From Fonticula alba ATCC 38817 (taxonomy: Eukaryota; Protista; Nucleariida): 13,987 nt of DNA. This document shows, one piece after another, positions 51-12,295 of the stretch. How positions within the stretch are numbered: position 1 is the first letter of the stretch; each line of letters starts with the position of its first letter. The notes under the pieces were generated by a model. It did not search any database. It saw nothing but the letters and a program-made list of their open reading frames with translations, and had not been told where the DNA came from. The position numbers and the translations under genes were made by a program. Location of the stretch: the NCBI GenBank assembly GCA_000388065.2, contig KB932208.1. One strand, 5' to 3'.

Positions 51-1198
51 TCCCGCCCGCCCCCCTCGGCCCGGCGGCCGACGGCACCGAGCCCCCCTTC
101 ACCTATGACTCCCTGCGCCGGACCATCCCCCGGCACTGCTTCGAGCGGTCGCTCGCCCGGTCGCTCGGCTACCTGGCCGTGGACCTGGCCTACGTCGTGG
201 TCCAGACCCTGGCCTTCCTCTGGGTGGACCGGCGCCTGGCCGGCTACAGCGACCTCCTCTCGTGGGGCCTCTGGACCGCCTGCTTCCTGACCTACACCTT
301 CCTCCAGGGCGTGGCCTTCACCTCGATCTGGGTGCTGGCCCACGAGTGCGGCCACCAGGCCTTCTCCCCGTCGGCCGTGGCCAACGACACCATCGGCTTC
401 ATCCTGCACACCATGCTCTTCGTGCCGTACTTCAGCTGGCAGCGCACCCACAACACCCACCACAAGTACACCAACAACCTGCAGAAGGACGAGGTGTTCG
501 TCCCGCTGGTTGCCCGCCAGGAGACCGACGTCCAGCAGGCGGCCAATCTCTCCCGCCGCGGGGACATCCAGACCACCCTGCAGCTGGCCGCCATGCTGAT
601 CCTCGGCTGGCCGCTCTACCTGCTGTACAATGCCACCGGCCACAAGACCGAGGGCTTTGCCTCGCACTACCTGCCCTCCTCCGAGATCTTCCTCCCCCGC
701 GATCGGCCCTTCGTCATCCTCAGCAACATCGGCCTGCTGGCCTGGGTGGCCGCCCTCGGCGCCTTCGCCATGCTCACCCCGGCCGGCTGGACCGACATCC
801 TGAAGTTCTACCTCCCGGCCCTCATGGTCAACTATGCCTTCCTGGTGGCCATCACCTTCCTCCAGCACACCGACCGCACCCTGGCCCACTTCGACCATGA
901 GGACTGGAACTACCTCCGCGGCGCCCTCAGCACCATCGACCGCACCATGTCCCCCTGGCTCGATCGCCGCCTGCACCACATCCACACCACCCACGTCAGC
1001 CACCACCTCTTCAGCAAGATCCCCTTCTACCATGCCGGCGAGGCCACGGTCGCCCTGCGCAAGGCCCTCGGCCCCTACTACGCCAGCGACTTCGAGACCC
1101 CCTTCCTGGTGGCGCTCTTCCGCAACTTCCGCGACCTCAACTACAAGCAGAACACCCAGGGCACCTTCTGGTGGCTGGAGACCCATCTGCTGGACTAG
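51..1198 (+). CDS. FAD2: Delta-12 (omega-6) fatty acid desaturase, FAD2 family; 5'-partial (true start lies upstream of the window or of the candidate acceptor at 49-50)
   Basis: The frame of ORF 179..1198 is open back to position 2. It reads EPPFTYDSLRRTIPRHCFERS (89-163), matching the FAD2 N-terminal PPFT..I..AIP.HCF.RS motif. Three His boxes are present: HECGH 341-355, HNTHH 449-463 and HVSHH 992-1006, followed by KIPFYHA.EAT. Several hydrophobic TM segments and strongly C/G-ending codons. Stop TAG at 1196-1198. Candidate 3' splice site CAG at 48-50 with CTTAC at 27-31. Confidence 0.93.
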
Positions 1199-2137: not shown

Positions 2138-3541
2138 TTAGAAGGGATTCCTCCGCGGGGCCGGGCGGGGCCGCGAGGCGAAACTCGACGGGGCCCGCCG
2201 CGACATGGCCGGCGCCGGCTGCTCGGCCAGCACCACGGCCGGACGCTGCTCGGCTTGTGGTGACATCGGGGCCGCCGCCGCCGCCGCCGCCGCCGCCGGT
2301 GACTCCGGCAAGCCGCCCCACACGCACACCCGGCCGTCCTCGCCGCCGGTGATGATGCGGTCCGCCCCGAGCCAGGCCACCGCGCGCACATGGTCCTCAT
2401 GGCCACCGGCCAGGCGCAGAACCTGCCGCACGCCAGCCGGCTGGGTCGGATCCAGCGCCAGCCCGGCCAGCGTCCCGTCGCCCTCGGTGCCCAGCAGCAG
2501 CAGCCCCGGCCCGAGGAGGCCCCCGGCCCCGGCGGCACCCCCTTCCCCGGGGGCCACATACGTCCGGTGGGTGAAGCCAATCAGCGAGTTGACCGCAGCA
2601 CCGGCGGTGCGGGCGCGCGCCCGCACATCCGGCCAATCCACGGCCAGGGCCGCCGTGTCCACGGACCACAGCCCGGCCGTTTCGGCGTGGCTGGTCACCG
2701 CCAAGGCCAGGGGGGCCCCCCCGGCGGCCATGCCCCCGGGCCCCGGCACCCGGGCAAACTCCGCCATGGCCGGGCTCTGCCGGGTGTTCAGCACGCACTC
2801 CACCGACTCCTCCTCCACCGACCGGGCCCCGGCATTCAGCACAAAGGCCGACACCAGACCATCCTCGGCGCACGAGAGGAAGACATTGGCCGCGCGCGGG
2901 TGGCACCGGATGGCCGTCACCTCGTCCGTGTGCGACTCGCCGAAGGTGGCCATCGGCTTCGGGGGGGCGCCGCCGGCCGCCATCCGCACGTCCCACAGGC
3001 ACACCGGCGCACTGCACAGGTCCATGTCCACCGGCGAGCCGGTGACCAGCATATGCCCGCCGGCCGCCACATCGAAGGCCGTCACGCCGCCCGGCCGCCA
3101 GGCCACGCACACGCGCCCGCCCTCGCTCGGCGGTGCCCGCAGGTCCCACATCCGCACGGCCCCATCGGTCCCGGCCGTGGCGAACACCAGCCACGGGATG
3201 TCGGCCACGGCATCGGCCACGCCGGCATCCCCGGCGGCCCCGGCCTCGGCCAGGCTGCCGGCCACCTCGATGGCTCCGGCCTCCGCCCGGCCAAACCGGA
3301 ACCCCTGGGCACCGGGAACATGCAGCGCCGTGGCCAGGCCCATGCCACCGGGCGCCGCGCAGTCGTACAGGCTGATGGTTTCGGTGCTGGTCAGGACGCC
3401 GGCCCGCGCGCTGCCGGCCGCCACCCGCACATCCAGGATGTATGTCCCGGCCCGCGCGTCTGGCACCGCGGTCTCCAGCAGCCCGTGCGTGCTGGGACCG
3501 GCCACGGGGCCGGCTTCCTCGCCGATGGAGAAGGGATCCAT
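2138..3541 (-). CDS. WDR89: WD40-repeat protein, WDR89-like (467 aa, apparently single coding exon)
   Basis: Internal ATG at 3541 of ORF 2138..4234, in frame, with TAA at 2140-2138. WD motifs: TAGTDGAVRMWDLR, VCLWDVR, and GHEDHVRAVAW...TGGEDGRVCVW. The segment ESHTDEVTAIRCHP...FLSCAEDGLVSAF...EESVECVLN resembles the WDR89 segment ESHSDDVTQVRFHP...SGS.DGLVNVFD...EED (family recalled, not searched). Confidence 0.82.
   Translation of the reverse strand: MDPFSIGEEAGPVAGPSTHGLLETAVPDARAGTYILDVRVAAGSARAGVLTSTETISLYDCAAPGGMGLATALHVPGAQGFRFGRAEAGAIEVAGSLAEAGAAGDAGVADAVADIPWLVFATAGTDGAVRMWDLRAPPSEGGRVCVAWRPGGVTAFDVAAGGHMLVTGSPVDMDLCSAPVCLWDVRMAAGGAPPKPMATFGESHTDEVTAIRCHPRAANVFLSCAEDGLVSAFVLNAGARSVEEESVECVLNTRQSPAMAEFARVPGPGGMAAGGAPLALAVTSHAETAGLWSVDTAALAVDWPDVRARARTAGAAVNSLIGFTHRTYVAPGEGGAAGAGGLLGPGLLLLGTEGDGTLAGLALDPTQPAGVRQVLRLAGGHEDHVRAVAWLGADRIITGGEDGRVCVWGGLPESPAAAAAAAAAPMSPQAEQRPAVVLAEQPAPAMSRRAPSSFASRPRPAPRRNPF
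2271..2297 (-). repeat. Trinucleotide repeat (9 units) encoding poly-Ala in the WDR89-like C-terminal tail
   Basis: (GCC)9 on +, translating to ESP-A9-PMS. Confidence 0.9.
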
Positions 3542-3578
3542 GCTGTGTTGGGGGAGAGGGGCAGAGGGAGGGGGGGGG

Positions 3579-3612
3579 GAGAGAGGGAGAGAGAGAGAGA
3601 GAGAGAGAGAGA
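3579..3612. repeat. (GA)n microsatellite upstream of the WDR89-like ATG
   Basis: Direct reading. It forms a pyrimidine tract on the - strand ahead of the CAG at 3545-3543. Confidence 0.9.
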
Positions 3613-4035
3613 AAGGCGAAGAAAGGAAGATGGAGAGGGAGGTAGGGGGGAGTGGCAATGGATCGTGGCCCGCTCGCCGCCCTCGCCGGGGGGGCTCTTG
3701 TCCGGCGGGGCGCACATGCGTGCGATCCGGCATGCGCCTGCCCGCGCGTGCCTCTCTCCGCCAGGCACGGGGAGAGCCAGGGGGGGGGGGGGGGGCCGAG
3801 CCGGGCGCACGCTTCCCCGCGTGCGTGGCTCCGGGCCCCTCTCTCCCGCCGATGCGCCCCCAGCTAGCCGGCCCCGCGCCCCGGCCCGGACCGGCGCCGG
3901 CCTCGGGCGCGCGTGCTTCGGCGAACGAAAGACCCCGGGACCCGCCGCGTGTGCGGCAGGGGTCCCCACGGATCCGGCCCCACTCAAAATAGCGGGGCTT
4001 TGACGGAAGCCATACCGGAAATCCGCCACACCCGT

Positions 4036-4045
4036 GTGGCGTGAT
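4036..4045 (-). promoter_or_regulatory. Candidate sterol regulatory element (ATCACGCCAC) in the divergent WDR89/ERG28 intergenic region
   Basis: The + strand reads GTGGCGTGAT, whose reverse complement fits the SREBP-type consensus RTCACSCCAY. This is a motif match only. Confidence 0.25.
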
Positions 4046-4174
4046 CCCTCGTCCACATGCCACCGCTCTCGACATGCCAACGAATGGCCGGCTCTGCCAC
4101 CTGGCCCGCCGCGCCACAGCCAGCGAACAGGCCGGGCGCGGGCGCGGGCGCGGGGGGGAACAACGCGACCCAAA

Positions 4175-4469
4175 GCACCCCCGCCCGCCCCCGGGAGCCG
4201 TGTGCCAGGAAGCCCCGCACATTTCGCTGATCAAACCGAGGGGGGCGGGAAAGAGGGTTGGGTCTCCCTCCCCCCCCCGTCATGCCTCGGCCGCGGCCGG
4301 GGCCGAGGGGGGAGATCGGAAGAGCACACGTGCACCCCCGCCCGCCCCCGGGAGCCGTGTGCCAGGAAGCCCCGCACATTTCGCTGATCAAACCGAGGGG
4401 GGCGGGAAAGAGGGTTGGGTCCCCCTCCCCCCCCCGTCATGCCTCGGCCGCGGCCGGGGCCGAGGGGGG
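4175..4469. repeat. 138-bp direct repeat pair (4175-4312 and 4332-4469), probably artefactual
   Basis: The copies are identical except for one T/C difference (4265 versus 4422). The period is 157 bp and the spacer is the adapter 19-mer. Confidence 0.92.
4313..4331 (+). other. Illumina TruSeq adapter fragment embedded in the assembly
   Basis: AGATCGGAAGAGCACACGT is identical to the first 19 nt of the TruSeq adapter AGATCGGAAGAGCACACGTCTGAACTCCAGTCAC. Confidence 0.95.
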
Positions 4470-4754: not shown

Positions 4755-4817
4755 CCCCCCCCCCCCCCCCAGCCGAAGACCCCTCCGGCACAGCTTGCCT
4801 GACTAGCCGCCTCCGCC

Positions 4818-5759
4818 ATGTTCTCGGTCATGCCTTCCCTCGCCACCCTGGCCCGCGCCTCCCTGATCTACGTGCGCCATGATGCACTGCACGCCGCGCC
4901 CCGCCCTGCCATCGTTGTCCATGCCACTGACCACGCCTCTGCCCCATGGCGGCGGTGCCCCTTGCCCCCGGACAGGCCGCCATCGGCCGGGTCGTTGGCG
5001 CCTACCTCGGCTTCTGCCGCCCGGACCAGCTCCGCAAGTACCTGTACACCATTGGCGCCGTGGAGGGTGCGCACATGCCCCGGCATTCCGGGATCCGGCC
5101 CCTCGCTCCCGCCCTCACCCGCCTCTCGGATATCCGCCCCCCCTTTGCTGCTTGAACACGCTAACCCAACATCCTGTCCATCCATCCATCTCTCTCTCTC
5201 TCTCTCCCGGGGCCGACTCAGTCACCCCCCTGGCCGGCCGCATCTTCACCATGTGGGTCACCCTGACCGGTGTCCTCTGCGTCGTGGCCGCCCACCAGTT
5301 CCACGTCCAGGGTACGGGCATTCGAATCGGCTGCTGCGCCCCCCCCCCCCCCCTCCCCCCCTGTCCCATGGATCTCCCCCGCCTTGCTGACACGCACGCA
5401 CGCCGGCGCCCCGTCCCCCGGGACCAGCCTTCCGCCTGACTGCCATTGCCTCCTTCGGCCTGGCCTTCTCCCACTTCATGTCCGAGGTCTTCATCTTCCG
5501 CACCCTGCGCTTCAAGGACACCTACTCCACCATGGCCGTGGCCCGTAAGTGCTTTCTTCCCCCTGCCCCCCGCCCCTCTGCCACCCACCTCCCTCTCCCC
5601 CGCAAAGACCCCGTGCCCTGACCGCCTTGCCATTTTGTCCCCCCGGTGGATGGAAACCCACCCCCGACGCGTCCATGTACACGCATGCGCGGACGCCCAT
5701 GCGCGCATACAGTCACCTGCACCGTCCTCCTGACCCTCAACGAGCTGATGGGCATGTAA
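4818..5759 (+). CDS. ERG28: ERG28-like ergosterol/sterol biosynthesis scaffold protein (132 aa, 5 exons: 4818-4871, 4976-5066, 5222-5311, 5428-5544, 5713-5759)
   Basis: Manual splicing at GT..AG sites (donors GTGCGC, GTGCGC, GTACGG, GTAAGT; branch-like CTGAC or CTAAC in introns 1-3) gives a 399-nt open frame: MFSVMPSLATLARASLIYAAIGRVVGAYLGFCRPDQLRKYLYTIGAVEVTPLAGRIFTMWVTLTGVLCVVAAHQFHVQAFRLTAIASFGLAFSHFMSEVFIFRTLRFKDTYSTMAVALTCTVLLTLNELMGM*. The motifs VTPLAGRIFTMW and LAFSHFMSEVFIFRT match the Erg28 family patterns (..L.ARTFG.W and LAL.HF.SE.F...T). Size and hydrophobicity also fit. Confidence 0.85.
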
Positions 5760-6177
5760 GCGGCGGCGTGCTGCATGGCCCCTCTTGGCCCCTCCCCCCC
5801 CCCCTTCCCTTGCCCTGCCCTGCGCGCGTAGGACGGCCGGACTATGCCAGTTGAGTCCACCACCTGCGAATGTGCGCCTCCGCCTCTTGTGGGCCGTCTC
5901 AGACATGTATATATATAATGCACACATTTTTTCCGCGCACATCCATGCATGCGTACATATACAACACGGCCTCGATCGGCACAAGTGGAGGTATATCGGA
6001 AAAAAGATGTGCACCCCTTGCTCCTCGCCCCTTCCCCAAAGGAAAAAACCCCGGAGGGCACACAAGAAGGCGATACAGGGGGGGGGGGGGGGGGGGGGGG
6101 GCGTGGTGCTAGCCCAAGCAGCCACGCCCCGCCAATCAACTGCCAGGGGAGGAGGAGGAGGAGGCGAGGAGAAACGG

Positions 6178-6977
6178 NNNNNNNNNNNNNNNNNNNNNNN
6201 NNNNNNNNNNNNNNNNNNNNNNNNNNNNNNNNNNNNNNNNNNNNNNNNNNNNNNNNNNNNNNNNNNNNNNNNNNNNNNNNNNNNNNNNNNNNNNNNNNNN
6301 NNNNNNNNNNNNNNNNNNNNNNNNNNNNNNNNNNNNNNNNNNNNNNNNNNNNNNNNNNNNNNNNNNNNNNNNNNNNNNNNNNNNNNNNNNNNNNNNNNNN
6401 NNNNNNNNNNNNNNNNNNNNNNNNNNNNNNNNNNNNNNNNNNNNNNNNNNNNNNNNNNNNNNNNNNNNNNNNNNNNNNNNNNNNNNNNNNNNNNNNNNNN
6501 NNNNNNNNNNNNNNNNNNNNNNNNNNNNNNNNNNNNNNNNNNNNNNNNNNNNNNNNNNNNNNNNNNNNNNNNNNNNNNNNNNNNNNNNNNNNNNNNNNNN
6601 NNNNNNNNNNNNNNNNNNNNNNNNNNNNNNNNNNNNNNNNNNNNNNNNNNNNNNNNNNNNNNNNNNNNNNNNNNNNNNNNNNNNNNNNNNNNNNNNNNNN
6701 NNNNNNNNNNNNNNNNNNNNNNNNNNNNNNNNNNNNNNNNNNNNNNNNNNNNNNNNNNNNNNNNNNNNNNNNNNNNNNNNNNNNNNNNNNNNNNNNNNNN
6801 NNNNNNNNNNNNNNNNNNNNNNNNNNNNNNNNNNNNNNNNNNNNNNNNNNNNNNNNNNNNNNNNNNNNNNNNNNNNNNNNNNNNNNNNNNNNNNNNNNNN
6901 NNNNNNNNNNNNNNNNNNNNNNNNNNNNNNNNNNNNNNNNNNNNNNNNNNNNNNNNNNNNNNNNNNNNNNNNNNNNN
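6178..6977. other. Assembly gap (800 N), probably hiding kinase subdomains IX-XI
   Basis: N run followed by G26. The visible kinase stops just after APE, and no DVYS/DxWS-type motif is seen on either side of the gap. Confidence 0.95.
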
Positions 6978-7181
6978 GGGGGGGGGGGGGGGGGGGGGGG
7001 GGGAGGCGAAAACGAAAGAGCAAGAGGTTAGCACGCGCATGATGGCGTGGGGAAAATCGAGAAAGAGGGAGGGAGAGAGAGAGAGAGAAAGAAAAAAGCC
7101 CAGCAGGGCAAGAGGAGCCCCCTCCGGAAAAAGAAGCAGTGACAGGGCGACTTGGCCCCATTCGTGTGTGGATGTACGCAC

Positions 7182-10100
7182 CGCACCGGCGTAGGCCGCC
7201 TCGAAGACCTCCGGCGCGGCGTAGCGCGGGGAGAAGCCGGCCACCACACTCAGGCGGTTAATCGAATCGTGGCTGTCCACAGGGAGAGAGTGAGGGTGCA
7301 CAAAGCGGCCTGCGCGTCAGAACGAGCGAGCGAGCGAGCGAGAGGGCGGCGAAGGAGCCGGAAGACCGAGGGCATGGTCCCCGGACGGAGGAGCATGACC
7401 AGCAGCCAAAGATCCCCCCAAAGAGGCATTGGCGCAGGGCGCAGGGCGCAGGGAGAAGGAAGCCGGGCGGAGGCGAGAGAGGGAGGGAACGCGTACTTGG
7501 TGCGGGCCAGGCCAAAGTCGCAGATGGCCGGCTCGAAGTAGATGACCCGCCTCGGGGCACCATCCGACGCCGGGCCACCGCTGGCCGGGATGGGCATGCG
7601 CGATGCCCGGAGCAGAACATTGGCGCTCTTGATGTCCCGGTGGGCGATGCCGACCGAGTGCATGTCGCGCACGGCCAGGCCAATGCGCCCGATGAGGTGG
7701 CACACCTCATCGGCCGACAGCAAGCCAGCCGACTCGTAGGCCCCCGGGTGCCGGCGACCGAGCGCGGCGAACAACCCCTCCGGCATGGCCTCCGGCTTGT
7801 GCAGGTACGTTTGCAAATCGCTGTCATACAGATGCGTGACAATGGTCCGAGGCCGGGAGGTGAAGCCAATCAGCCGGACCACCGAGTCCTTGAAGGCCAG
7901 TGACCACAGCAGGGCCACCTCCTGGCGGAAGCGCTCATTGTTCTGGTGCTCGGACCGGCTGGCCTGCCCGGACACATGCTTGATGGCCACCACCTCGGAC
8001 CCGGCCCGGGCCACGGCATTGGGATCCAGCAGCCGGCCCCGGTACACGGTGCCGGCGCCGCCCTTGCCGATGGGCTCCAGCTGCTGCAGCTGCTGGGCCC
8101 CGTCAACATTCAGCTCCAGGAAGCCCGGCACCGACACCGACTCGCAGGTGTTCAGCACCGTGGCCTCGGAATCCGTGTAGTTGGCGTTGAAGATGGTCGA
8201 CCGCCGGTGCATCTCCAGCTGCTCGAGCTCCTTCTGCCGGCGGGGGCGCCAGTAGAAGATGTACACACAGAGCAGCAGGATGGCAAGCAGCAGCAGGATC
8301 ACCACGATCGGCACCGCGATGGACACGGCCCGCCGAGAGGAGCTGATCGGCGTCTGCACCGAGAAGCTCAGGGTGTTGGTGCTTCGGCCGGCCATCGGGT
8401 GCACCGCGTGCACCGTCACATCCAGGAAGGCACGCGAGGGGAAGGTCTCGCGGATGAGGACCGTCGGCGAGGTCGTTGTAACCTGGACCAGTGGCGCCGG
8501 ATTGGCGGCGGCGACCGTGGCGGGCTCACCAGCCGCCAGGGCCACCGACGCGGTGGCATTGAACACCTGGATGAGATACTGCGCCGCGTCCGGGGAGGGC
8601 TCCCAGTCGAAGCTGAGCATCTTGCTGGAGATGGACACCTCGCCAATCAGGCCGCCCGGCGGCCGAGGCCGGGTCCAGACAACCGTCTGGAAGATGGGCG
8701 ACCTGTTGTCGGCTGCCGACCCCTCCGGCGACCCGGCCGCAGGCGAGGAGGAAGTGGACGAAGCCGACGCCACGGCCACCACGCTCGATGACGAGGCCGA
8801 CCCCGATGCCGGGGAGCCCGGCGCACGCTCAAGGGCCAGGCGCACGAAGATGTCCCGTGCCCCGGACAGATTCTTGATGGTGAAGGAGCTGGGGAAGGTG
8901 GCCACCCCGGCGGTGGTGCTGGCCGAGCCGGAGGCCAGCGCCTCGCCGAAGGGCAAGCGCGCCACCTCGGTCAGAACCAAGTTCCCCGGCCGGCCCTGGG
9001 AGATGACCACACTGCCGCCGGCCTGCGGCAGGACGTCCGCCTGCATGGTCCAAGACAGGTGCAGGGTGTGGTGCGTGCTCTGGATGTCGACCAGGGCGAA
9101 GACCGACCCATCGCCAGCCGGCAGGGGATCCGGCAGGCAAAGCGTCTCCACCGCGGCCGGCAGCCCGGTCTCCGGGTGCAGGTACTGCGGGTCCCAGGTG
9201 TTGTTGCCGATACACTTCCGATGGGGCTGGCCGGAAAAGCCGGTTGGACAGACCCCGACGGCCCGGTGCCCGGCCACCGTCTTGGGCAGCGAGACCTCCG
9301 ACAGGGGATCGACCCCGGCCGGGCAGCTGTGCTCCACACACGGCTGGCCGCCGACATTTTCGAGGTCCCACTCGCCGGTGGCCATACACCGGAGGACCGG
9401 GGCACCGTCATGGTTCGGCGGACACTGGCCGGTTACCACCTCCCCGACGTTGGAGCGGGGGAAGGACCCAAGCGCCGATTCATACGGCAAGCAATAGGAA
9501 ACTGCCGGGATCATGAGGCCGGGACCGAAGGAGGGGTGGGGGACGGAGTGTGTGTGTGTGTGCGTGTGCGTGTGCGTGTGCGTGTCTGTCAGCGGGGAGG
9601 ACGGCAACAAAGGGAGGCCCAGATCCCATGCTATCGGCAAGTCCCGTCCTGGGTCCTCGCCGCAACTGGAGGCTGGAAAGGATGCGACAATGGGAAAACG
9701 GCAAGAGAGAGAGAGGGGGGAGAGAAAGCGGAAAGAGGACGCACTGAGGCACAGGTCGGTGATCGGCCCCCAGCCGGTGGGCATGCAGTAGCGGCTCTTT
9801 TCACCGGAGTAGATCCCGGTGCAGGAGATCCTGCGTTCGGCCGAGACAATCTGCTCGGGCCAGTGGCCCTCCTCCGGAAGCGCCTCCGAGGGGATGCACT
9901 TGTCGCCTGCGTGGGGGGGGGGGGGGGGGGGGGGGGAGTGACCGGAGAAATGCCGGCCAGCAGGAGAAGCCCAGGGACAGGCGGCACAAACTCGGTAAGC
10001 ACGGGCACACCACGCGGAGGGACCGGAGGGGAAGGGAGCGAGGACCGGAGGAAACGTACGGACACACGCGCCATCGACCATCGAGTGGGTGGAAGGGCAA

Positions 10101-10716
10101 CTGCAGCCACCATTCGGGGTGCAAATCATGTCCGGGGTGCACACCTCCACCTTCATCCCGATGAAGGTGAAGAAAGAGTCGATGAACCGCATACAGTCCT
10201 CCCCATCAACCGGGCGCATATGGACGAGAGTCTATGCATGAAAAGAGGGCGCAATAGGTGAGTGCGGGCTTGATCCCATTCAGCCGGGCTGGCGGCGAGG
10301 GAGGGGGGGGGGGGGGGGGTGCAAGAGGTGACACATGGCAAGCGCACCGTTTTGCGCTCATAAAAAACGTCCTTGAAGAAGATGGATGCCAGGGACAGAG
10401 GCATGGGCATCACATGGAAGGCGCCGCCCTCACTTTGCACCGCACAAGGGAGGAAAGGAGGCCGACGATGGCACAACGCGAAGCAATGGATGTCCGCCTG
10501 GTGAGAAACAAAAAAAAACACCGTCAAAGGGTGTGGGGGCAAAGGGATCCCCAAAGGGAGGTCGTACATTTCGACAGTCTCATGGTAGCCGGGGTAGGTG
10601 GTGTGGGCGCCATCGATGGCCGTGACGGCGAAGGCGTGGCAATTGGAGAAATGCATGTTCGCCGAGAAGGTGTTGCTTTTGAGGATGATCATGCGTCAGG
10701 TCAGGGGCAGAGAGAG

Positions 10717-10808
<92 letters not shown>

Positions 10809-11584
10809 GCAGGAGGCGGGGGCGTTGATGTCAAAGGCCGGCTGCCCGGGCTCTGATCCGACGAGGAGGCCATGGGCGTACAAGGTCGAGGGGTCGATGA
10901 AGTACTGCGTCGAATAGGGAAGCAGGTAATCCACGTAGTCCGATGTGGGATAGTAGAACAGGGACGTTTCGCGTCCGCACAGGGTATAAGGGCCGATGGA
11001 CTCCTCAAACTGCATCATTCAACGCAAGCGAGAGCATGTCAGAGCCAAGGCAAGGAAGAGGAGGGGGAGCGGGGGGGGGGGGGGCGAGAAAAAAAACCAG
11101 CCCTCCCACCCCGGTCCCCGTGAGGTGCCGGTCCCAGCCAAACACATGTGCGAAAAGATCCGGGAGGACGTACAACGAGCTCCGGCATGGTGAATTGGGC
11201 CACCGGGCCACCATTAAAGAGGCTCGAGGCACCCAAGTCAAAACGATAGTACGGGCTCACCGTGGAAGTGTCGAGGTCTGCTTCGTCTTGGAGATCGTGG
11301 TACGAGGCCATGTATGGGCCGGAAGTGATGACCAAGAAAAAGTACCTCCGCCAACCATCCTCGCTGAGAGTCACTTTGAATATGTCGGGCGGGGTGACGA
11401 GATTGTCCTCCTCGGGAGGCGGCATCAGGGGCAGAGACGGATCGCGAACCACACACCGGGGGTAGGGACTGACATAGTCACTGGCGGCATGGACGGCATC
11501 GCCATTGCTGTGGCTGGGCCGGGCAAAGAGGTGATCCATCCGCGGGGAGTAGGCGCTACCGGTAGCGGTGGCGGCGGCGGTGGC

Positions 11585-11631
<47 letters not shown>

Positions 11632-12019
11632 TGCTGCTGGAGCCCGGCGGGTCGGGGCATGAGCACTTCTTGTAGGGATGCGGCAGGGAAGAGCCGCCCG
11701 ACGAAGGAGTGGAGGGCTGTGGCGGCGGGGCCAGGCAGCTGGGATCAACATCGAGGCCCTCTACATGATGGCGGTAGTCCGGGGCGATCGGCCGAGCGGT
11801 GGCGGGAGCTCGAGCCCGGCGTGCGATCATTTGTCGAGCCGCTTGGATGACCTCCGGCGACCGGAGGAGGGGGGAATCAGACGGCACAGGGGCCGTCTGG
11901 ACGGTGAACTCCCGCGGCGATGCGGCGGTGCCGGTGGCGATCAGAGCGCAGCAGTACAACGCCAGGGACAGCACCAGCAGGGCATACTGGCGCCGGCGAG
12001 GCGCCAAGAGGCCGGCCAT
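7182..12019 (-). CDS. Single-pass receptor-like TKL-group Ser/Thr protein kinase, 3'-incomplete (at least 1199 aa). Exons: 12019-11174, 11009-10882, 10675-10568, 10432-10348, 10231-10060, 9906-9745, 9501-7497, 7272-7182; remainder probably in gap 6178-6977
   Basis: The exon chain joins in frame at GT..AG sites with compatible phases (0,2,2,0,1,1,2). It starts with a signal peptide (MAGLLAPRRRQYALLVLSLALYCCALIATG) and has a TM helix at 8329-8249. Kinase motifs: GKGGAG 8068-8051, VAIK (K at 7981-7979), alphaC RFRQE, HRDIKSAN 7642-7619, DFG 7519-7511, and GFSPRYAAPE (APE 7217-7209). Internal 5' exon boundaries and the last donor (7181 versus 7186) are less certain than the kinase itself. Confidence 0.88.
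8249..8329 (-). other. Transmembrane helix of the receptor kinase
   Basis: 27 hydrophobic residues (AVSIAVPIVVILLLLAILLLCVYIFYW) followed by the basic stop-transfer motif RPRRQK. Confidence 0.9.
8352..9100 (-). other. Two fibronectin type III-like domains (about 9100-8831 and 8671-8352) separated by a Ser/Ala-rich linker
   Basis: FN3-like signatures: STHHTLHLSWT...FTIKNLSG...IFVRL, and PPGGL....ISSKMLSFDWEPSPDAAQYLIQV...VTVHAV. Boundaries are approximate. Confidence 0.6.
9137..9906 (-). other. Three tandem Cys-rich HRM/hormone-receptor-domain-like (or Sushi-like) modules in the kinase ectodomain
   Basis: The pattern C...[WFL]P......C....G...R/L.C....W....C recurs three times: HWPEQIVSAERRISCTGIYSGEKSRYCMPTGW, FPRSNVGEVVTGQCPPNHDGAPVLRCMATGEW, and LPKTVAGHRAVGVCPTGFSGQPHRKCIGNNTW. 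The span includes intron 9744-9502. Confidence 0.65.
9548..9585. repeat. (TG)n/(TGTGCG)n microsatellite in kinase intron 6
   Basis: Direct reading: 38 nt of purine-pyrimidine alternation. Confidence 0.9.
10709..10808. repeat. (GA)n microsatellite of about 100 nt with occasional C interruptions, inside kinase intron 2
   Basis: Direct reading. It reads (CT)n on the sense (-) strand and lies within intron 10881-10676. Confidence 0.95.
11588..11629 (-). repeat. (GCC)14 trinucleotide repeat encoding poly-Ala in the kinase ectodomain
   Basis: 14 perfect GGC units on +, translating to SSSS-A14-TATAAATAT. Confidence 0.93.
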
Positions 12020-12053
12020 GGTACGATGCCTGGGAGCCTGAGACTGGTGGGCA

Positions 12054-12105
12054 GCGAGAGGAGCAGGCGAGAGGAGCAGGCGAGAGGAGCAGGCGAGAGG
12101 AGCAG
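12054..12105. repeat. Minisatellite (GCGAGAGGAGCAG)x4
   Basis: Four exact 13-nt copies start at 12054, 12067, 12080 and 12093, lying 35-86 nt upstream of the kinase ATG. Confidence 0.95.
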
Positions 12106-12295
12106 GGCGTGAGGGGGGGGGGGTGTCGGGGATTGCAAATTGCCAGCCGGAAATAATGGTGACCGGGGGGGCGCGGGCCGGGGGGCCGCCGGGCTGGGCG
12201 CCGATAAAGAGCCGGCCAGTGGCCGGCAAGATAGCGAGGGGAAAGGGGGCGCCGCTCGGGCACATGCTCCGGCCCCGGGCTGCCCCGGTTGCCAG

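What the first reader, a model, noticed from the sequence alone, without database searches (positions are those of the whole stretch)
7182..12019. Receptor-like TKL Ser/Thr kinase with an unusual mosaic, metazoan-style ectodomain
Seen: eight exons splice in frame into signal peptide, Pro/Ser/Ala-rich stalk, unknown region, EGF-like Cys module, three Cys/Trp modules, two FN3-like domains, TM helix and a kinase with all visible catalytic motifs intact. Established: K in the HRDxKxxN catalytic loop marks Ser/Thr (TKL-type) rather than tyrosine kinases (HRDLAARN); FN3 and EGF modules are typical of animal receptor ectodomains. Inference: this is a cell-surface receptor in a unicellular eukaryote with a domain combination I do not recognise from any characterised receptor. 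It could be a sensing or adhesion receptor built independently of animal RTKs.
Basis: partly seen in the sequence, partly recalled or inferred. Interest (0 to 1): 0.75.

Follow-up and report, generated by a model that had tools for sequence, protein, structure and literature searches.

The report
Sushi/HRM–FN3 receptor kinase of Fonticula
This is a real, expressed gene of the amoeba Fonticula alba (a close relative of fungi) for a cell-surface receptor whose outer part is built from animal-style sushi/HRM and fibronectin modules and whose inner part is a serine/threonine kinase; the design has no studied counterpart, but it belongs to a small gene family with many relatives in environmental DNA.

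Summary
Transcript contigs from four public runs splice the minus strand of 12019-7182 into eight GT..AG exons. One 2443-nt contig joins the 5' exons to the ectodomain/TM exon, so this is one gene.

The 1199 codons encode, in order:
- a signal peptide and a low-complexity Pro/Ser/Ala region
- an unassigned N-domain of about 220 aa
- an EGF-like Cys motif
- three 4-Cys/Trp modules of the sushi(CCP)/HRM type
- two FN3 domains (predicted fold, Z 11.9)
- one TM helix and a conserved juxtamembrane motif
- a kinase with GxGxxG, VAIK, HRDIKSAN, DFG and SPRYAAPE intact

The kinase C-lobe is missing from the assembly. The transcript runs on into the 800-N gap at 6178-6977.

The genome is Fonticula alba. 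Three paralogs (contigs C15, C3, C4) share the layout, and environmental proteins carry (HRM/sushi)n-FN3-kinase. A family kinase profile scores best against the TKL kinases CTR1, B-Raf and IRAK4. The modelled ectodomain most resembles Eph receptor ectodomains.

One paper (PMC12716839) had noted HRM-bearing non-GPCR membrane proteins in F. alba, but I found no mention of a kinase in its main text. This scan also noted receptor-kinase arrays elsewhere in this genome, and the HRM modules of this same window.

Verdict: a new variant of a known kind, the receptor-like Ser/Thr kinase. Interest is moderate.

The parts
11174..12019 (-). Exon 1: ATG at 12019, signal peptide (aa 1-33), Pro/Ser/Ala-rich region with a poly-Ala (GCC)n tract (aa 34-195), and the start of the unassigned N-domain
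   Evidence: Joint 11174|11009. RNA contigs cover 12083-11645 and 11551-11174. One open frame with no stop. No Pfam hit.
10882..11009 (-). Exon 2 (128 nt), N-domain
   Evidence: Joints 11174|11009 and 10882|10675
10568..10675 (-). Exon 3 (108 nt), N-domain
   Evidence: Joints 10882|10675 and 10568|10432
10348..10432 (-). Exon 4 (85 nt), N-domain
   Evidence: Joints 10568|10432 and 10348|10231
10060..10231 (-). Exon 5 (172 nt): end of the N-domain plus the EGF-like Cys motif (aa 420-446, window 10141-10061)
   Evidence: Joint 10348|10231. The Cys spacing is conserved in the paralogs. No Pfam EGF hit.
9745..9906 (-). Exon 6 (162 nt, phase 1-1): exactly one sushi/HRM-like module (module 1, aa 448-500)
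   Evidence: Joint 9745|9501. Module alignment A4. The C4 paralog has a 162-nt exon for the same module.
7497..9501 (-). Exon 7 (2005 nt): modules 2 and 3, FN3-1, Ser-rich linker, FN3-2, TM helix, juxtamembrane segment, and the kinase from the N-lobe through DFG
   Evidence: Joints 9745|9501 and 7497|7272. Pfam Pkinase 8.5e-15 and HRM 2.4e-5.
9134..9499 (-). Sushi/HRM-like modules 2 (9499-9329) and 3 (9328-9134)
   Evidence: AF2 pLDDT about 90. The module profile hits CCP repeats of CR1, CR2 and C2, and the CRFR1 ectodomain. Pfam HRM matches 11 of 15 modules and Sushi 4 of 15.
8345..9103 (-). FN3-1 (9103-8828), Ser-rich linker (8827-8699), FN3-2 (8695-8345)
   Evidence: VIA-align Z 11.9, rmsd 2.4 A over 93 residues for FN3-2. 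Tandem FN3 matches span model residues 136-386. FN3-1 is modelled with low confidence.
8249..8329 (-). Transmembrane helix (aa 892-918) followed by RPRRQK
   Evidence: Highest Kyte-Doolittle window of the protein, 3.47
8111..8164 (-). Conserved juxtamembrane motif ATVLNT..SVPGFL just before the kinase
   Evidence: Shared with the paralogs and with environmental relatives
7182..7272 (-). Exon 8 (91 nt): activation segment and P+1 loop with SPRYAAPE
   Evidence: Joint 7497|7272 and a loose end at 7181. The motif is family-wide.
6178..6977 (.). 800-N assembly gap that should hold the remaining kinase exons (subdomains IX-XI)
   Evidence: The transcript runs on for at least 255 nt from 7182. Its first 30 nt are absent from the whole assembly. 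The C4 paralog has two more exons after this point.

Best explanation
The locus encodes an expressed type I single-pass receptor-like protein kinase of Fonticula alba.

Outside the cell it carries a variable distal head: an unassigned N-domain, an EGF-like motif and three sushi(CCP)/HRM-type disulfide modules. The head is held away from the membrane by two FN3 domains.

Inside, after a conserved juxtamembrane motif, sits an RD-type kinase that looks catalytically competent and is TKL-like, with a Ser/Thr-type catalytic loop.

Inferred mechanism: a ligand or a partner surface binds the head and brings receptors together. The kinases then phosphorylate each other's activation segments and downstream targets on Ser/Thr.

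Shown here: the gene structure, expression, topology, domain types, motif integrity and family membership. Inferred only: ligand binding, dimerisation and substrate class.
For: - Splicing and expression: seven junctions. One contig joins exons 1 to 7.
- Kinase motifs GKGGAGTV, VAIK, the alphaC Glu, HRDIKSAN and DFG lie in exon 7; SPRYAAPE lies in exon 8. Pfam Pkinase 8.5e-15.
- TKL affinity: the family profile's best solved relatives are CTR1 (108 bits), B-Raf (about 100) and IRAK4 (about 90).
- Ectodomain: AF2 models modules 2-3 at pLDDT about 90 and FN3-2 at about 85. FN3 matches at Z 11.9. Eph receptor ectodomains are the top Foldseek and Atlas shape matches. The module profile hits complement CCPs and class-B GPCR ectodomains.
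- Family: paralogs on C15, C3 and C4 have the same order of parts. Environmental proteins combine HRM/sushi, fn3 and a kinase and share the SPRYAxPE and LNT..PGF motifs.
- Head versus signalling part: against the C15 paralog the ectodomain is 40% identical and the cytoplasmic part 85%. Third-position differences at identical four-fold codons are 53% versus 25% (Fisher p 4e-4).
Against: - The C-lobe (subdomains IX-XI) is not in the assembly, so an intact kinase is inferred from only 10 codons of transcript and from the paralogs.
- No ligand, binding partner or phosphorylation data exist.
- TKL placement is by profile ranking, not by a tree.
- The N-domain has no assigned fold.
- FN3-1 is modelled poorly (pLDDT about 50).
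- Window-only Pfam scores for HRM (25.1 bits) and Sushi (17.8 bits) are below the curated cut-offs.
Confidence: 0.8

Rival explanations
1. It is mainly a cell-cell adhesion or self/non-self recognition molecule used during collective feeding or aggregation. The kinase reports contact between cells rather than a soluble cue.
For: - Sushi and FN3 modules are typical of adhesion proteins, and the Eph-like layout belongs to a contact receptor.
- The head diverges fast (dN/dS about 0.7) while the signalling half stays alike.
- Other notes of this scan describe receptor-kinase arrays with variable heads in this genome.
Against: No partner is known and there are no population data on polymorphism. 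A dN/dS below 1 does not show diversifying selection. This is compatible with the main explanation rather than exclusive of it.
Confidence: 0.3
2. The kinase is dual-specific or phosphorylates tyrosine, supplying phosphotyrosine signalling in a lineage without tyrosine kinases.
For: - In the P+1 loop PRYAAPE, Arg-aromatic-x-Ala-Pro-Glu resembles the tyrosine-kinase pattern (K/R)W(M/T)APE, and the usual GT of Ser/Thr kinases is absent (the comparison is from my own knowledge).
- Fonticula has no TK but keeps 3 SH2 domains and 1 PTP (PMC4342544).
- TKL kinases do this job in Dictyostelium and plants (my own knowledge).
Against: The catalytic loop HRDIKSAN is the Ser/Thr type. There is no biochemical evidence. 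The resemblance is motif-level only.
Confidence: 0.15
3. The locus is a truncated or decaying copy, and the apparent completeness is an artefact of reading only part of the gene.
For: The assembly ends the gene at an 800-N gap. I did not see the product among database hits, whereas the C3 and C4 paralogs' products are there.
Against: The spliced in-frame transcript continues beyond exon 8 in the kinase frame, reading GSVDTPLEQD. This fits the ..FEQD..DVY.. stretch of the paralogs. There is no stop in 1199 codons. The C15 paralog has a gap at the same place, which points to assembly collapse of near-identical 3' ends.
Confidence: 0.05
4. The 5' exons (12019-10348) belong to a separate upstream gene.
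For: RNA contigs break at the (GCC)n tract at 11552-11644.
Against: One 2443-nt contig joins 11551 through six junctions to 8140. The break lies inside a single open exon.
Confidence: 0.02

Closest known systems
Eph receptor tyrosine kinases (animals)
   Same: The order of parts matches: distal globular head, Cys-rich region with a sushi-type and an EGF-type module, two FN3 domains, a single TM helix and a kinase. Eph ectodomains are the top structural matches of the modelled exon-7 ectodomain. Four family modules weakly hit Pfam Ephrin_CRD.
   Different: No ephrin-binding domain was detected. There are three sushi/HRM modules instead of one, and they follow rather than precede the EGF-like motif. 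The kinase is TKL-like with a Ser/Thr-type catalytic loop, not a TK. TM-scores are low (about 0.2-0.3), so the match reflects shared modules. Homology is not shown.
Receptor-like kinases of the TKL group (plant RLK/Pelle-IRAK family; amoebozoan and oomycete transmembrane TKLs such as Entamoeba TMKs)
   Same: They are single-pass receptors with a TKL-type Ser/Thr kinase. IRAK4, CTR1 and Raf are the nearest solved kinases. They show lineage-specific expansion with varied ectodomains.
   Different: Their ectodomains are LRR, LysM, lectin or CXXC-rich, not sushi/HRM plus FN3 (my own knowledge). The family here has its own SPRYAxPE P+1 loop and its own LNT..PGF juxtamembrane motif. No phylogeny was made.
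HRM (hormone receptor) domain of secretin and adhesion GPCRs
   Same: Pfam HRM is the best single-module match for 11 of 15 family modules. CRFR1 and VIP-receptor ectodomains are hit by the module profile.
   Different: The modules are attached to a kinase, not to GAIN/7TM. They have four Cys, not six, and they match only model positions about 3-53 of 66. Complement CCP repeats score at least as well (C2b 41.9 bits against CRFR1 33.5). The window's own score is just under the Pfam cut-off.
HRM-containing non-GPCR transmembrane proteins of F. alba noted in PMC12716839
   Same: Probably the same gene family. That paper reports five or six such proteins in the F. alba proteome and asks whether they reflect transfer, common ancestry or convergence.
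   Different: I found no mention of a kinase, of FN3 or of environmental relatives in the passages about these proteins. I could not read its supplement. I did not see the window's own product among database hits, so it may not be one of their proteins.
Other Fonticula receptor-like kinases with furin-like, VSP or GF_recep_IV Cys-rich ectodomains
   Same: Same genome, same single-pass topology, and kinase N-lobes 30-41% identical.
   Different: Their ectodomains are a different type and much larger (900-1500 aa). The SPRYAAPE exon search finds only C8, C4 and C3.

Membership tests
Eukaryotic protein kinase, catalytically competent | Gly-rich loop, VAIK Lys, alphaC Glu, HRD, catalytic-loop Asn, DFG, APE | tested here: met
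   GKGGAGTV, VAIK, RFRQEVALL, HRDIKSAN, DFG and SPRYAAPE are all present. Pfam Pkinase 8.5e-15.
Eukaryotic protein kinase, catalytically competent | Complete C-lobe (subdomains IX-XI) | not testable with these tools
   It lies in the 800-N gap. Only about 10 codons are visible from the transcript's loose end. Paralogs C3 and C4 have it.
TKL group | Closer in sequence to TKL kinases than to other groups | tested here: met
   The best 60 solved hits of the family profile are CTR1, B-Raf and IRAK4, plus two TK entries. The 118-bit EGFR chain is 678 aa long and has no single stretch passing the threshold.
TKL group | Placement inside TKL in a kinome phylogeny | not tested
Tyrosine kinase (TK) group | Catalytic loop HRDLAARN or HRDLRAAN | tested here: not met
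   The loop is HRDIKSAN. PMC4342544 reports no TK in Fonticula.
Sushi / CCP (PF00084) | About 55-65 aa with four Cys and a Trp between Cys3 and Cys4 | tested here: met
   In alignment A4 three Cys and one Gly are invariant; the Trp and the fourth Cys are nearly invariant. The module profile hits CR1, CR2, C2, MCP and factor H.
Sushi / CCP (PF00084) | Pfam score over the gathering cut-off in the window protein | tested here: not met
   17.8 bits against a cut-off of 20.7.
HRM (PF02793) | Pfam score over the gathering cut-off | tested here: inconclusive
   Window exon 7 scores 25.1 bits against 26.2. C15 scores 27.2, C5 32.9, P0001 26.2 and P0004 28.4.
HRM (PF02793) | Full domain with three disulfides, including the N-terminal C..WD..CW part | tested here: not met
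   The modules have four Cys and match about positions 3-53 of 66. The feature definition is from my own knowledge.
Fibronectin type III | Seven-strand beta-sandwich of about 90-100 aa | tested here: met
   FN3-2: Z 11.9, rmsd 2.4 A, 93 aligned residues. The tandem matches also cover FN3-1. Pfam fn3 passes in aligned relatives but gives no hit in the window.
EGF-like domain | Six-Cys pattern recognised by a profile | tested here: inconclusive
   A conserved spacing C-x5,6-C-x4,9-C-x-C-x10,13-C is seen in four paralogs. No Pfam EGF hit at E up to 1.
Eph receptor family | N-terminal ephrin-binding domain (PF01404) | tested here: not met
   No hit in exons 1-5 or in the genome. The genome search's control also stayed silent, so this absence is weak.
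Eph receptor family | Cys-rich region plus two FN3 before the TM helix | tested here: met
   Foldseek top hits are EphA4, EphA2 and EphB2 at E down to 5.8e-12. Atlas rows 1, 3 and 8 are Eph receptors.

The most novel reading that the evidence does not exclude
Holomycota independently assembled an Eph-like contact receptor: a variable head, a sushi/EGF Cys-rich region, two FN3 domains, a TM helix and a kinase. It sits on a TKL-type kinase whose P+1 loop (PRYAAPE) lets it phosphorylate tyrosine. The family, with heads that diverge fast while the signalling half is kept alike by copying between paralogs, serves cell-cell or prey recognition during Fonticula's collective feeding and aggregation. 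If so, sushi/HRM modules and receptor-kinase logic were present in the opisthokont ancestor or were reinvented outside animals.
Probability: 0.1. Interest if true: 0.8.

Novelty: new variant of a known kind. Interest (0 to 1): 0.5.

Why it matters
Receptor kinases with sushi, EGF and FN3 ectodomains are usually treated as part of the animal toolkit. Fungi are reported to lack receptor-kinase architectures (PMC6733946), and Fonticula has no tyrosine kinases (PMC4342544). This gene shows that the sister lineage of fungi has an expressed receptor of animal-like outer design on a TKL-like Ser/Thr kinase.

It also bears on a question left open in PMC12716839. The 'HRM' proteins of F. alba, at least those of this subfamily, are receptor kinases. 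Their modules are as close to complement-type sushi repeats as to GPCR HRMs. Relatives with up to more than 20 such modules exist in environmental eukaryotes, so the domain is not an isolated oddity of one genome.

Fonticula is an aggregative organism. That makes the family a concrete candidate for testing how cell-surface recognition was built outside animals.

Tried and rejected
- The 989-aa ORF 7250-10219 is rejected as a gene product. It reads through three introns.
- A continuous exon from 10675 to 10348, or an acceptor at 10495, is rejected. RNA shows the intron 10567-10433. A donor inside or next to the (CT)n tract is also rejected, because exon 2 ends at 10882.
- The joint 10321->11063 (CA..GA, with runs of G in between) links two poly-C tracts. 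I take it for an assembly artefact of the contigs.
- A search of the assembly for the first 30 nt of the missing next exon found nothing.
- Folding the N-domain of paralog P0001 alone failed (mean pLDDT 32), so no fold search was made on it.
- The ESM Atlas feature search of that N-domain gave no usable hit.
- Pfam Ephrin_lbd was not found in the genome, but the control was silent too.
- The word-based protein searches found only F. alba paralogs and unnamed metagenome proteins. The one named exception was a weak Lithocolla hit.
- The supplement of PMC12716839 that lists the F. alba HRM proteins is not held.
- Joined-model step left out. The spliced 1199-aa model was assembled only inside sandbox scripts, for coordinates and for local comparison with paralog loci. 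The N-domain spans exons 1-5, so it could not be folded or searched as a whole.

Full report
**Source.** The window is contig C8:157718-171704 of a 31.3-Mb, 214-contig, roughly 67% G+C genome. The closest database proteins are named 'serine/threonine protein kinase [Fonticula alba]', and they sit on contigs whose lengths equal C4 and C3 of this assembly. The organism is therefore Fonticula alba, an aggregative amoeba that is sister to fungi.

**Gene structure.** I laid the contigs of four public 2012 runs on 6978-12150. The index labels them 'RNA?', and the splice joints described next confirm that they are transcripts. Every well-supported joint is CT..AC on the + strand, which is GT..AG on the minus strand. 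The joints are 11174|11009, 10882|10675, 10568|10432, 10348|10231, 9745|9501 and 7497|7272.

The junction 10060|9906 lies in a poly-C stretch that the tool skips. It follows exactly from the 2443-nt contig, whose 262 unlisted bases equal 85 (exon 4) + 172 (exon 5) + 5 (start of exon 6). It has a GTACGT donor and a CAG acceptor.

That one contig runs from 11551 to 8140 across six junctions, so the 5' exons and the ectodomain/TM exon belong to one mRNA. The only break upstream is the (GCC)n tract at 11552-11644, inside an uninterrupted open exon. A second contig covers 11645-12083, about 64 nt upstream of the ATG at 12019.

The eight exons add up to 3597 nt, 1199 codons and no stop. Two places differ from what the frames alone suggest. 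Exon 2 ends at 10882, and the whole (CT)n tract is intronic. The open stretch 10567-10433 is an intron.

**Incompleteness.** At 7182 the transcript does not stop. In all four runs a contig continues for at least 255 nt with sequence that is not in the window and not anywhere in the assembly. Read on the minus strand in the exon-8 frame it begins GSVDTPLEQD. This lines up with the ..PFEQD..DVYALG / ..FEDQ..DIYSFG stretch that leads into subdomain IX in the complete paralogs.

The 800-N gap at 6178-6977 therefore hides the last exons. The C4 paralog has two exons after this point. The C15 paralog has a gap at the same relative position, which suggests collapse of near-identical 3' ends during assembly.

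**Protein, by exon and by reference.** The joined model was used only inside scripts for bookkeeping and was never sent to a search or fold tool. The N-domain, which spans exons 1-5, could therefore not be searched or folded whole.
- **aa 1-33:** signal peptide with a basic n-region and a hydrophobic core.
- **aa 34-195:** Pro/Ser/Ala-rich, with poly-Ala.
- **aa 196-418:** no Pfam match and not alignable with confidence to the paralogs' N-domains.
- **aa 420-446:** a Cys spacing of EGF type that is conserved in all four paralogs but has no profile hit.
- **aa 448-623:** three modules of 53-65 aa. The first is encoded by a symmetric phase 1-1 exon of 162 nt. The C4 gene has an exon of the same size for the same module.
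- **aa 634-886:** two FN3 domains separated by a Ser-rich linker.
- **aa 892-918:** the only strong hydrophobic segment after the signal peptide, followed by RPRRQK.
- **From aa 972:** the kinase.

**Modules.** An alignment of 15 modules (window, C15, C3, C4 and one environmental protein) shows C-P...(W/F)P.T..G..A.G.C..G(F/Y).G....C...G.W....C. Scanned singly, 11 of the 15 match Pfam HRM, 4 match Sushi and 4 match Ephrin_CRD, all weakly.

As a profile they hit complement CCP repeats. CR1 scores 7.8e-46 over 8 repeats and C2b 9.1e-10 for one repeat. They also hit class-B GPCR ectodomains (CRFR1 3.8e-7).

They are best called sushi(CCP)/HRM-type modules. The HRM label alone is too specific, since they have four rather than six Cys and cover only part of the HRM model. 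To my knowledge the class-B ectodomain is itself a short-consensus-repeat fold, so the double match is expected.

**Fold.** AlphaFold2 on the exon-7 ectodomain with a four-paralog alignment gave mean pLDDT 66. Modules 2-3 were near 90 and FN3-2 near 85. FN3-1 and the linker were poor.
- VIA-align gives FN3 matches at Z 11.9 (rmsd 2.4 A, 93 residues), with tandem-FN3 matches spanning residues 136-386.
- The best Foldseek matches overall are Eph receptor ectodomains (EphA4 5.8e-12, EphA2, EphB2).
- The ESM Atlas shape search also puts Eph receptors first.
- TM-scores are low (0.2-0.3). What is shared is the string of module types (Cys-rich sushi region plus two FN3 before the membrane), not a rigid shape.

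**Kinase.** All visible motifs are intact (GKGGAGTV, VAIK, the alphaC Glu, HRDIKSAN, DFG, APE), and it is an RD kinase. A single-sequence search of solved structures is weak (PIM-1 1e-4 for the window fragment, CTR1 4e-11 for P0001), so the domain is divergent.

A profile of eight family kinase domains scores best against CTR1 (108 bits), B-Raf (about 100) and IRAK4 (about 90). These are all TKL kinases. Tyrosine kinases come next, and no other Ser/Thr group appears among the best 60. One EGFR entry at 118 bits is a 678-aa chain in which no single stretch passes the threshold, so its total probably sums more than one match.

I therefore accept 'TKL-like', but I made no tree.

The family has two signatures of its own: the P+1 loop SPRYA(A/P/S)PE and a juxtamembrane LNT......PGF motif. 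Both are shared with environmental relatives, and the first also with a Lithocolla (nucleariid) transcript.

**Family and distribution.** In the genome the exon-7 ectodomain finds C15 (41% identity over its whole length) and weaker pieces on C4 and C5. The kinase finds C15 (84%), C3 and C4 (49%), and then at least 45 further kinase loci at 30-41%.

Four of those further loci were sampled. All are 1300-1900-aa open frames with one TM segment ahead of the kinase. Three of the four carry furin-like, VSP or GF_recep_IV Cys-rich ectodomain hits, and the fourth (L019) has no ectodomain hit. Fonticula thus has a large receptor-kinase repertoire, of which this is a four-member sushi/HRM-FN3 subfamily. 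The SPRYAAPE exon is found only on C8, C4 and C3, and C15's copy lies in its gap.

C3 and C4 show the same order of parts, and C3 carries a complete kinase in one exon.

Outside the genome, word-based searches found metagenome proteins with HRM + fn3 + kinase. An exhaustive profile search with the ectodomain found 1802 proteins at E up to 0.001 and 113 at E up to 1e-30. Several of the top hits combine many HRM/sushi modules, fn3 and a kinase, for example a 1780-aa protein.

Among ten top hits looked up, the only named member was the F. alba C3 protein. The rest are unnamed ENA/JGI metagenome proteins. One 42-kb environmental contig (65-70% G+C, with a split PEPCK gene and a tetraspanin, hence eukaryotic) carries two such genes in tandem.

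I did not see the window's own product, or C15's, in any of these searches. Both genes are interrupted by gaps and may be unannotated.

**Head versus signalling half.** Against C15 the ectodomain part of exon 7 is 40% identical (dN 0.61, dS 0.86). The TM-to-DFG part is 85% identical (dN 0.12, dS 0.32). Poor alignment can inflate dS, so I also counted third positions only at aligned, identical four-fold codons. They differ at 53% in the ectodomain and 25% in the cytoplasmic part (Fisher p 4e-4).

The signalling half is therefore younger or has been homogenised, by gene conversion or a chimeric origin. The head has diverged freely. Similarity ends at the exon-7 boundary, so the event is not very recent. 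Other notes of this scan describe the same pattern in receptor-kinase arrays elsewhere in this genome. I tested it only for this pair.

**Literature.**
- PMC12716839 reports five or six non-GPCR transmembrane proteins with HRM domains in F. alba, the only non-holozoan with HRM in its survey. It leaves open horizontal transfer, common ancestry or convergence. In its passages about F. alba I found no mention of a kinase, and its supplement was not readable here.
- PMC4342544 finds no tyrosine kinase, one PTP and three SH2 domains in Fonticula.
- PMC6733946 finds no receptor-kinase architectures in fungi.
- I found no paper that describes this architecture.

**Verdict.** The gene is a receptor-like, TKL-like Ser/Thr kinase with an animal-style sushi/HRM-FN3 ectodomain, an Eph-like layout on a non-tyrosine kinase. 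It is not unique, since it has paralogs, environmental relatives and a passing mention in the literature. Receptor Ser/Thr kinases with lineage-specific ectodomains are also a known theme. I rate it a new variant of a known kind, with moderate interest. The ligand, the fold of the N-domain, the phospho-acceptor specificity and the biological role remain open.

Noticed in passing
window 6178-6977 and L007 6897-7257 (C15 paralog): Both close paralogs have an assembly gap right after the intron that follows the DFG exon. This is probably collapse of near-identical 3' kinase exons, so both genes lack their C-lobe in the assembly.
   Followed up: partly
window 11506: All four runs' transcript contigs read C where the assembly has T on the + strand. 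On the coding strand this turns codon 172 from AAT (Asn) into GAT (Asp). The site is 46 nt from a contig end and next to the (GCC)n tract, so it may be an error.
   Followed up: no
window 10321 and 11063: Some contigs join two poly-C tracts (skipping 741 nt, CA..GA, with extra G in between). This looks like a de Bruijn artefact. It implies that some unspliced or genomic reads are present in the runs.
   Followed up: no
window 9745-9906; L015 5687-5848: One sushi/HRM module equals one symmetric phase 1-1 exon of 162 nt in both the C8 and the C4 genes. This is the exon design usually linked with module shuffling in animals.
   Followed up: partly
window about 11813-11830 (aa 64-69): A dibasic RRAR motif lies in the N-terminal low-complexity region. 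It could be a pro-protein convertase site. This is pure pattern.
   Followed up: no
G000:C5:1233184-1239669 (L016, L017): Further loci with HRM/sushi-type modules (Pfam HRM up to 32.9 bits), followed in L017 by a stretch that reads like FN3. No close kinase match lies nearby, and large N gaps interrupt them. They may be the other HRM membrane proteins counted in PMC12716839.
   Followed up: partly
G000: C10, C5, C11, C9 and others; L019-L022: At least 45 further kinase loci. Many lie in 1300-1900-aa open frames with one TM segment, and three of the four sampled carry furin-like, VSP or GF_recep_IV ectodomain hits. They are clustered on C10 and C5. This is a large receptor-kinase repertoire in the sister lineage of fungi.
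   Followed up: partly
L023 (ENA metagenome contig, 41.8 kb): Two tandem (sushi/HRM)n-FN3-kinase genes of 1604 and 1564 aa on a 65-70% G+C eukaryotic contig. Its PEPCK is 70% identical to Fonticula's. The organism is unknown.
   Followed up: partly
window 179-1195 (+) and 2141-4234 (-): Neighbouring genes: a fatty-acid desaturase (Pfam 9.3e-28) and a WD40-repeat protein. They show no evident link to the receptor.
   Followed up: no
window about 4800-5770 (+): A small multi-exon gene on the opposite strand, with hydrophobic short exons, ends just downstream of the gap. I did not identify it.
   Followed up: no
window 10705-10825 and 11560-11640: A long (CT)n microsatellite fills intron 2, and a (GCC)n tract encodes poly-Ala in exon 1. 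Both break the short-read contigs.
   Followed up: no
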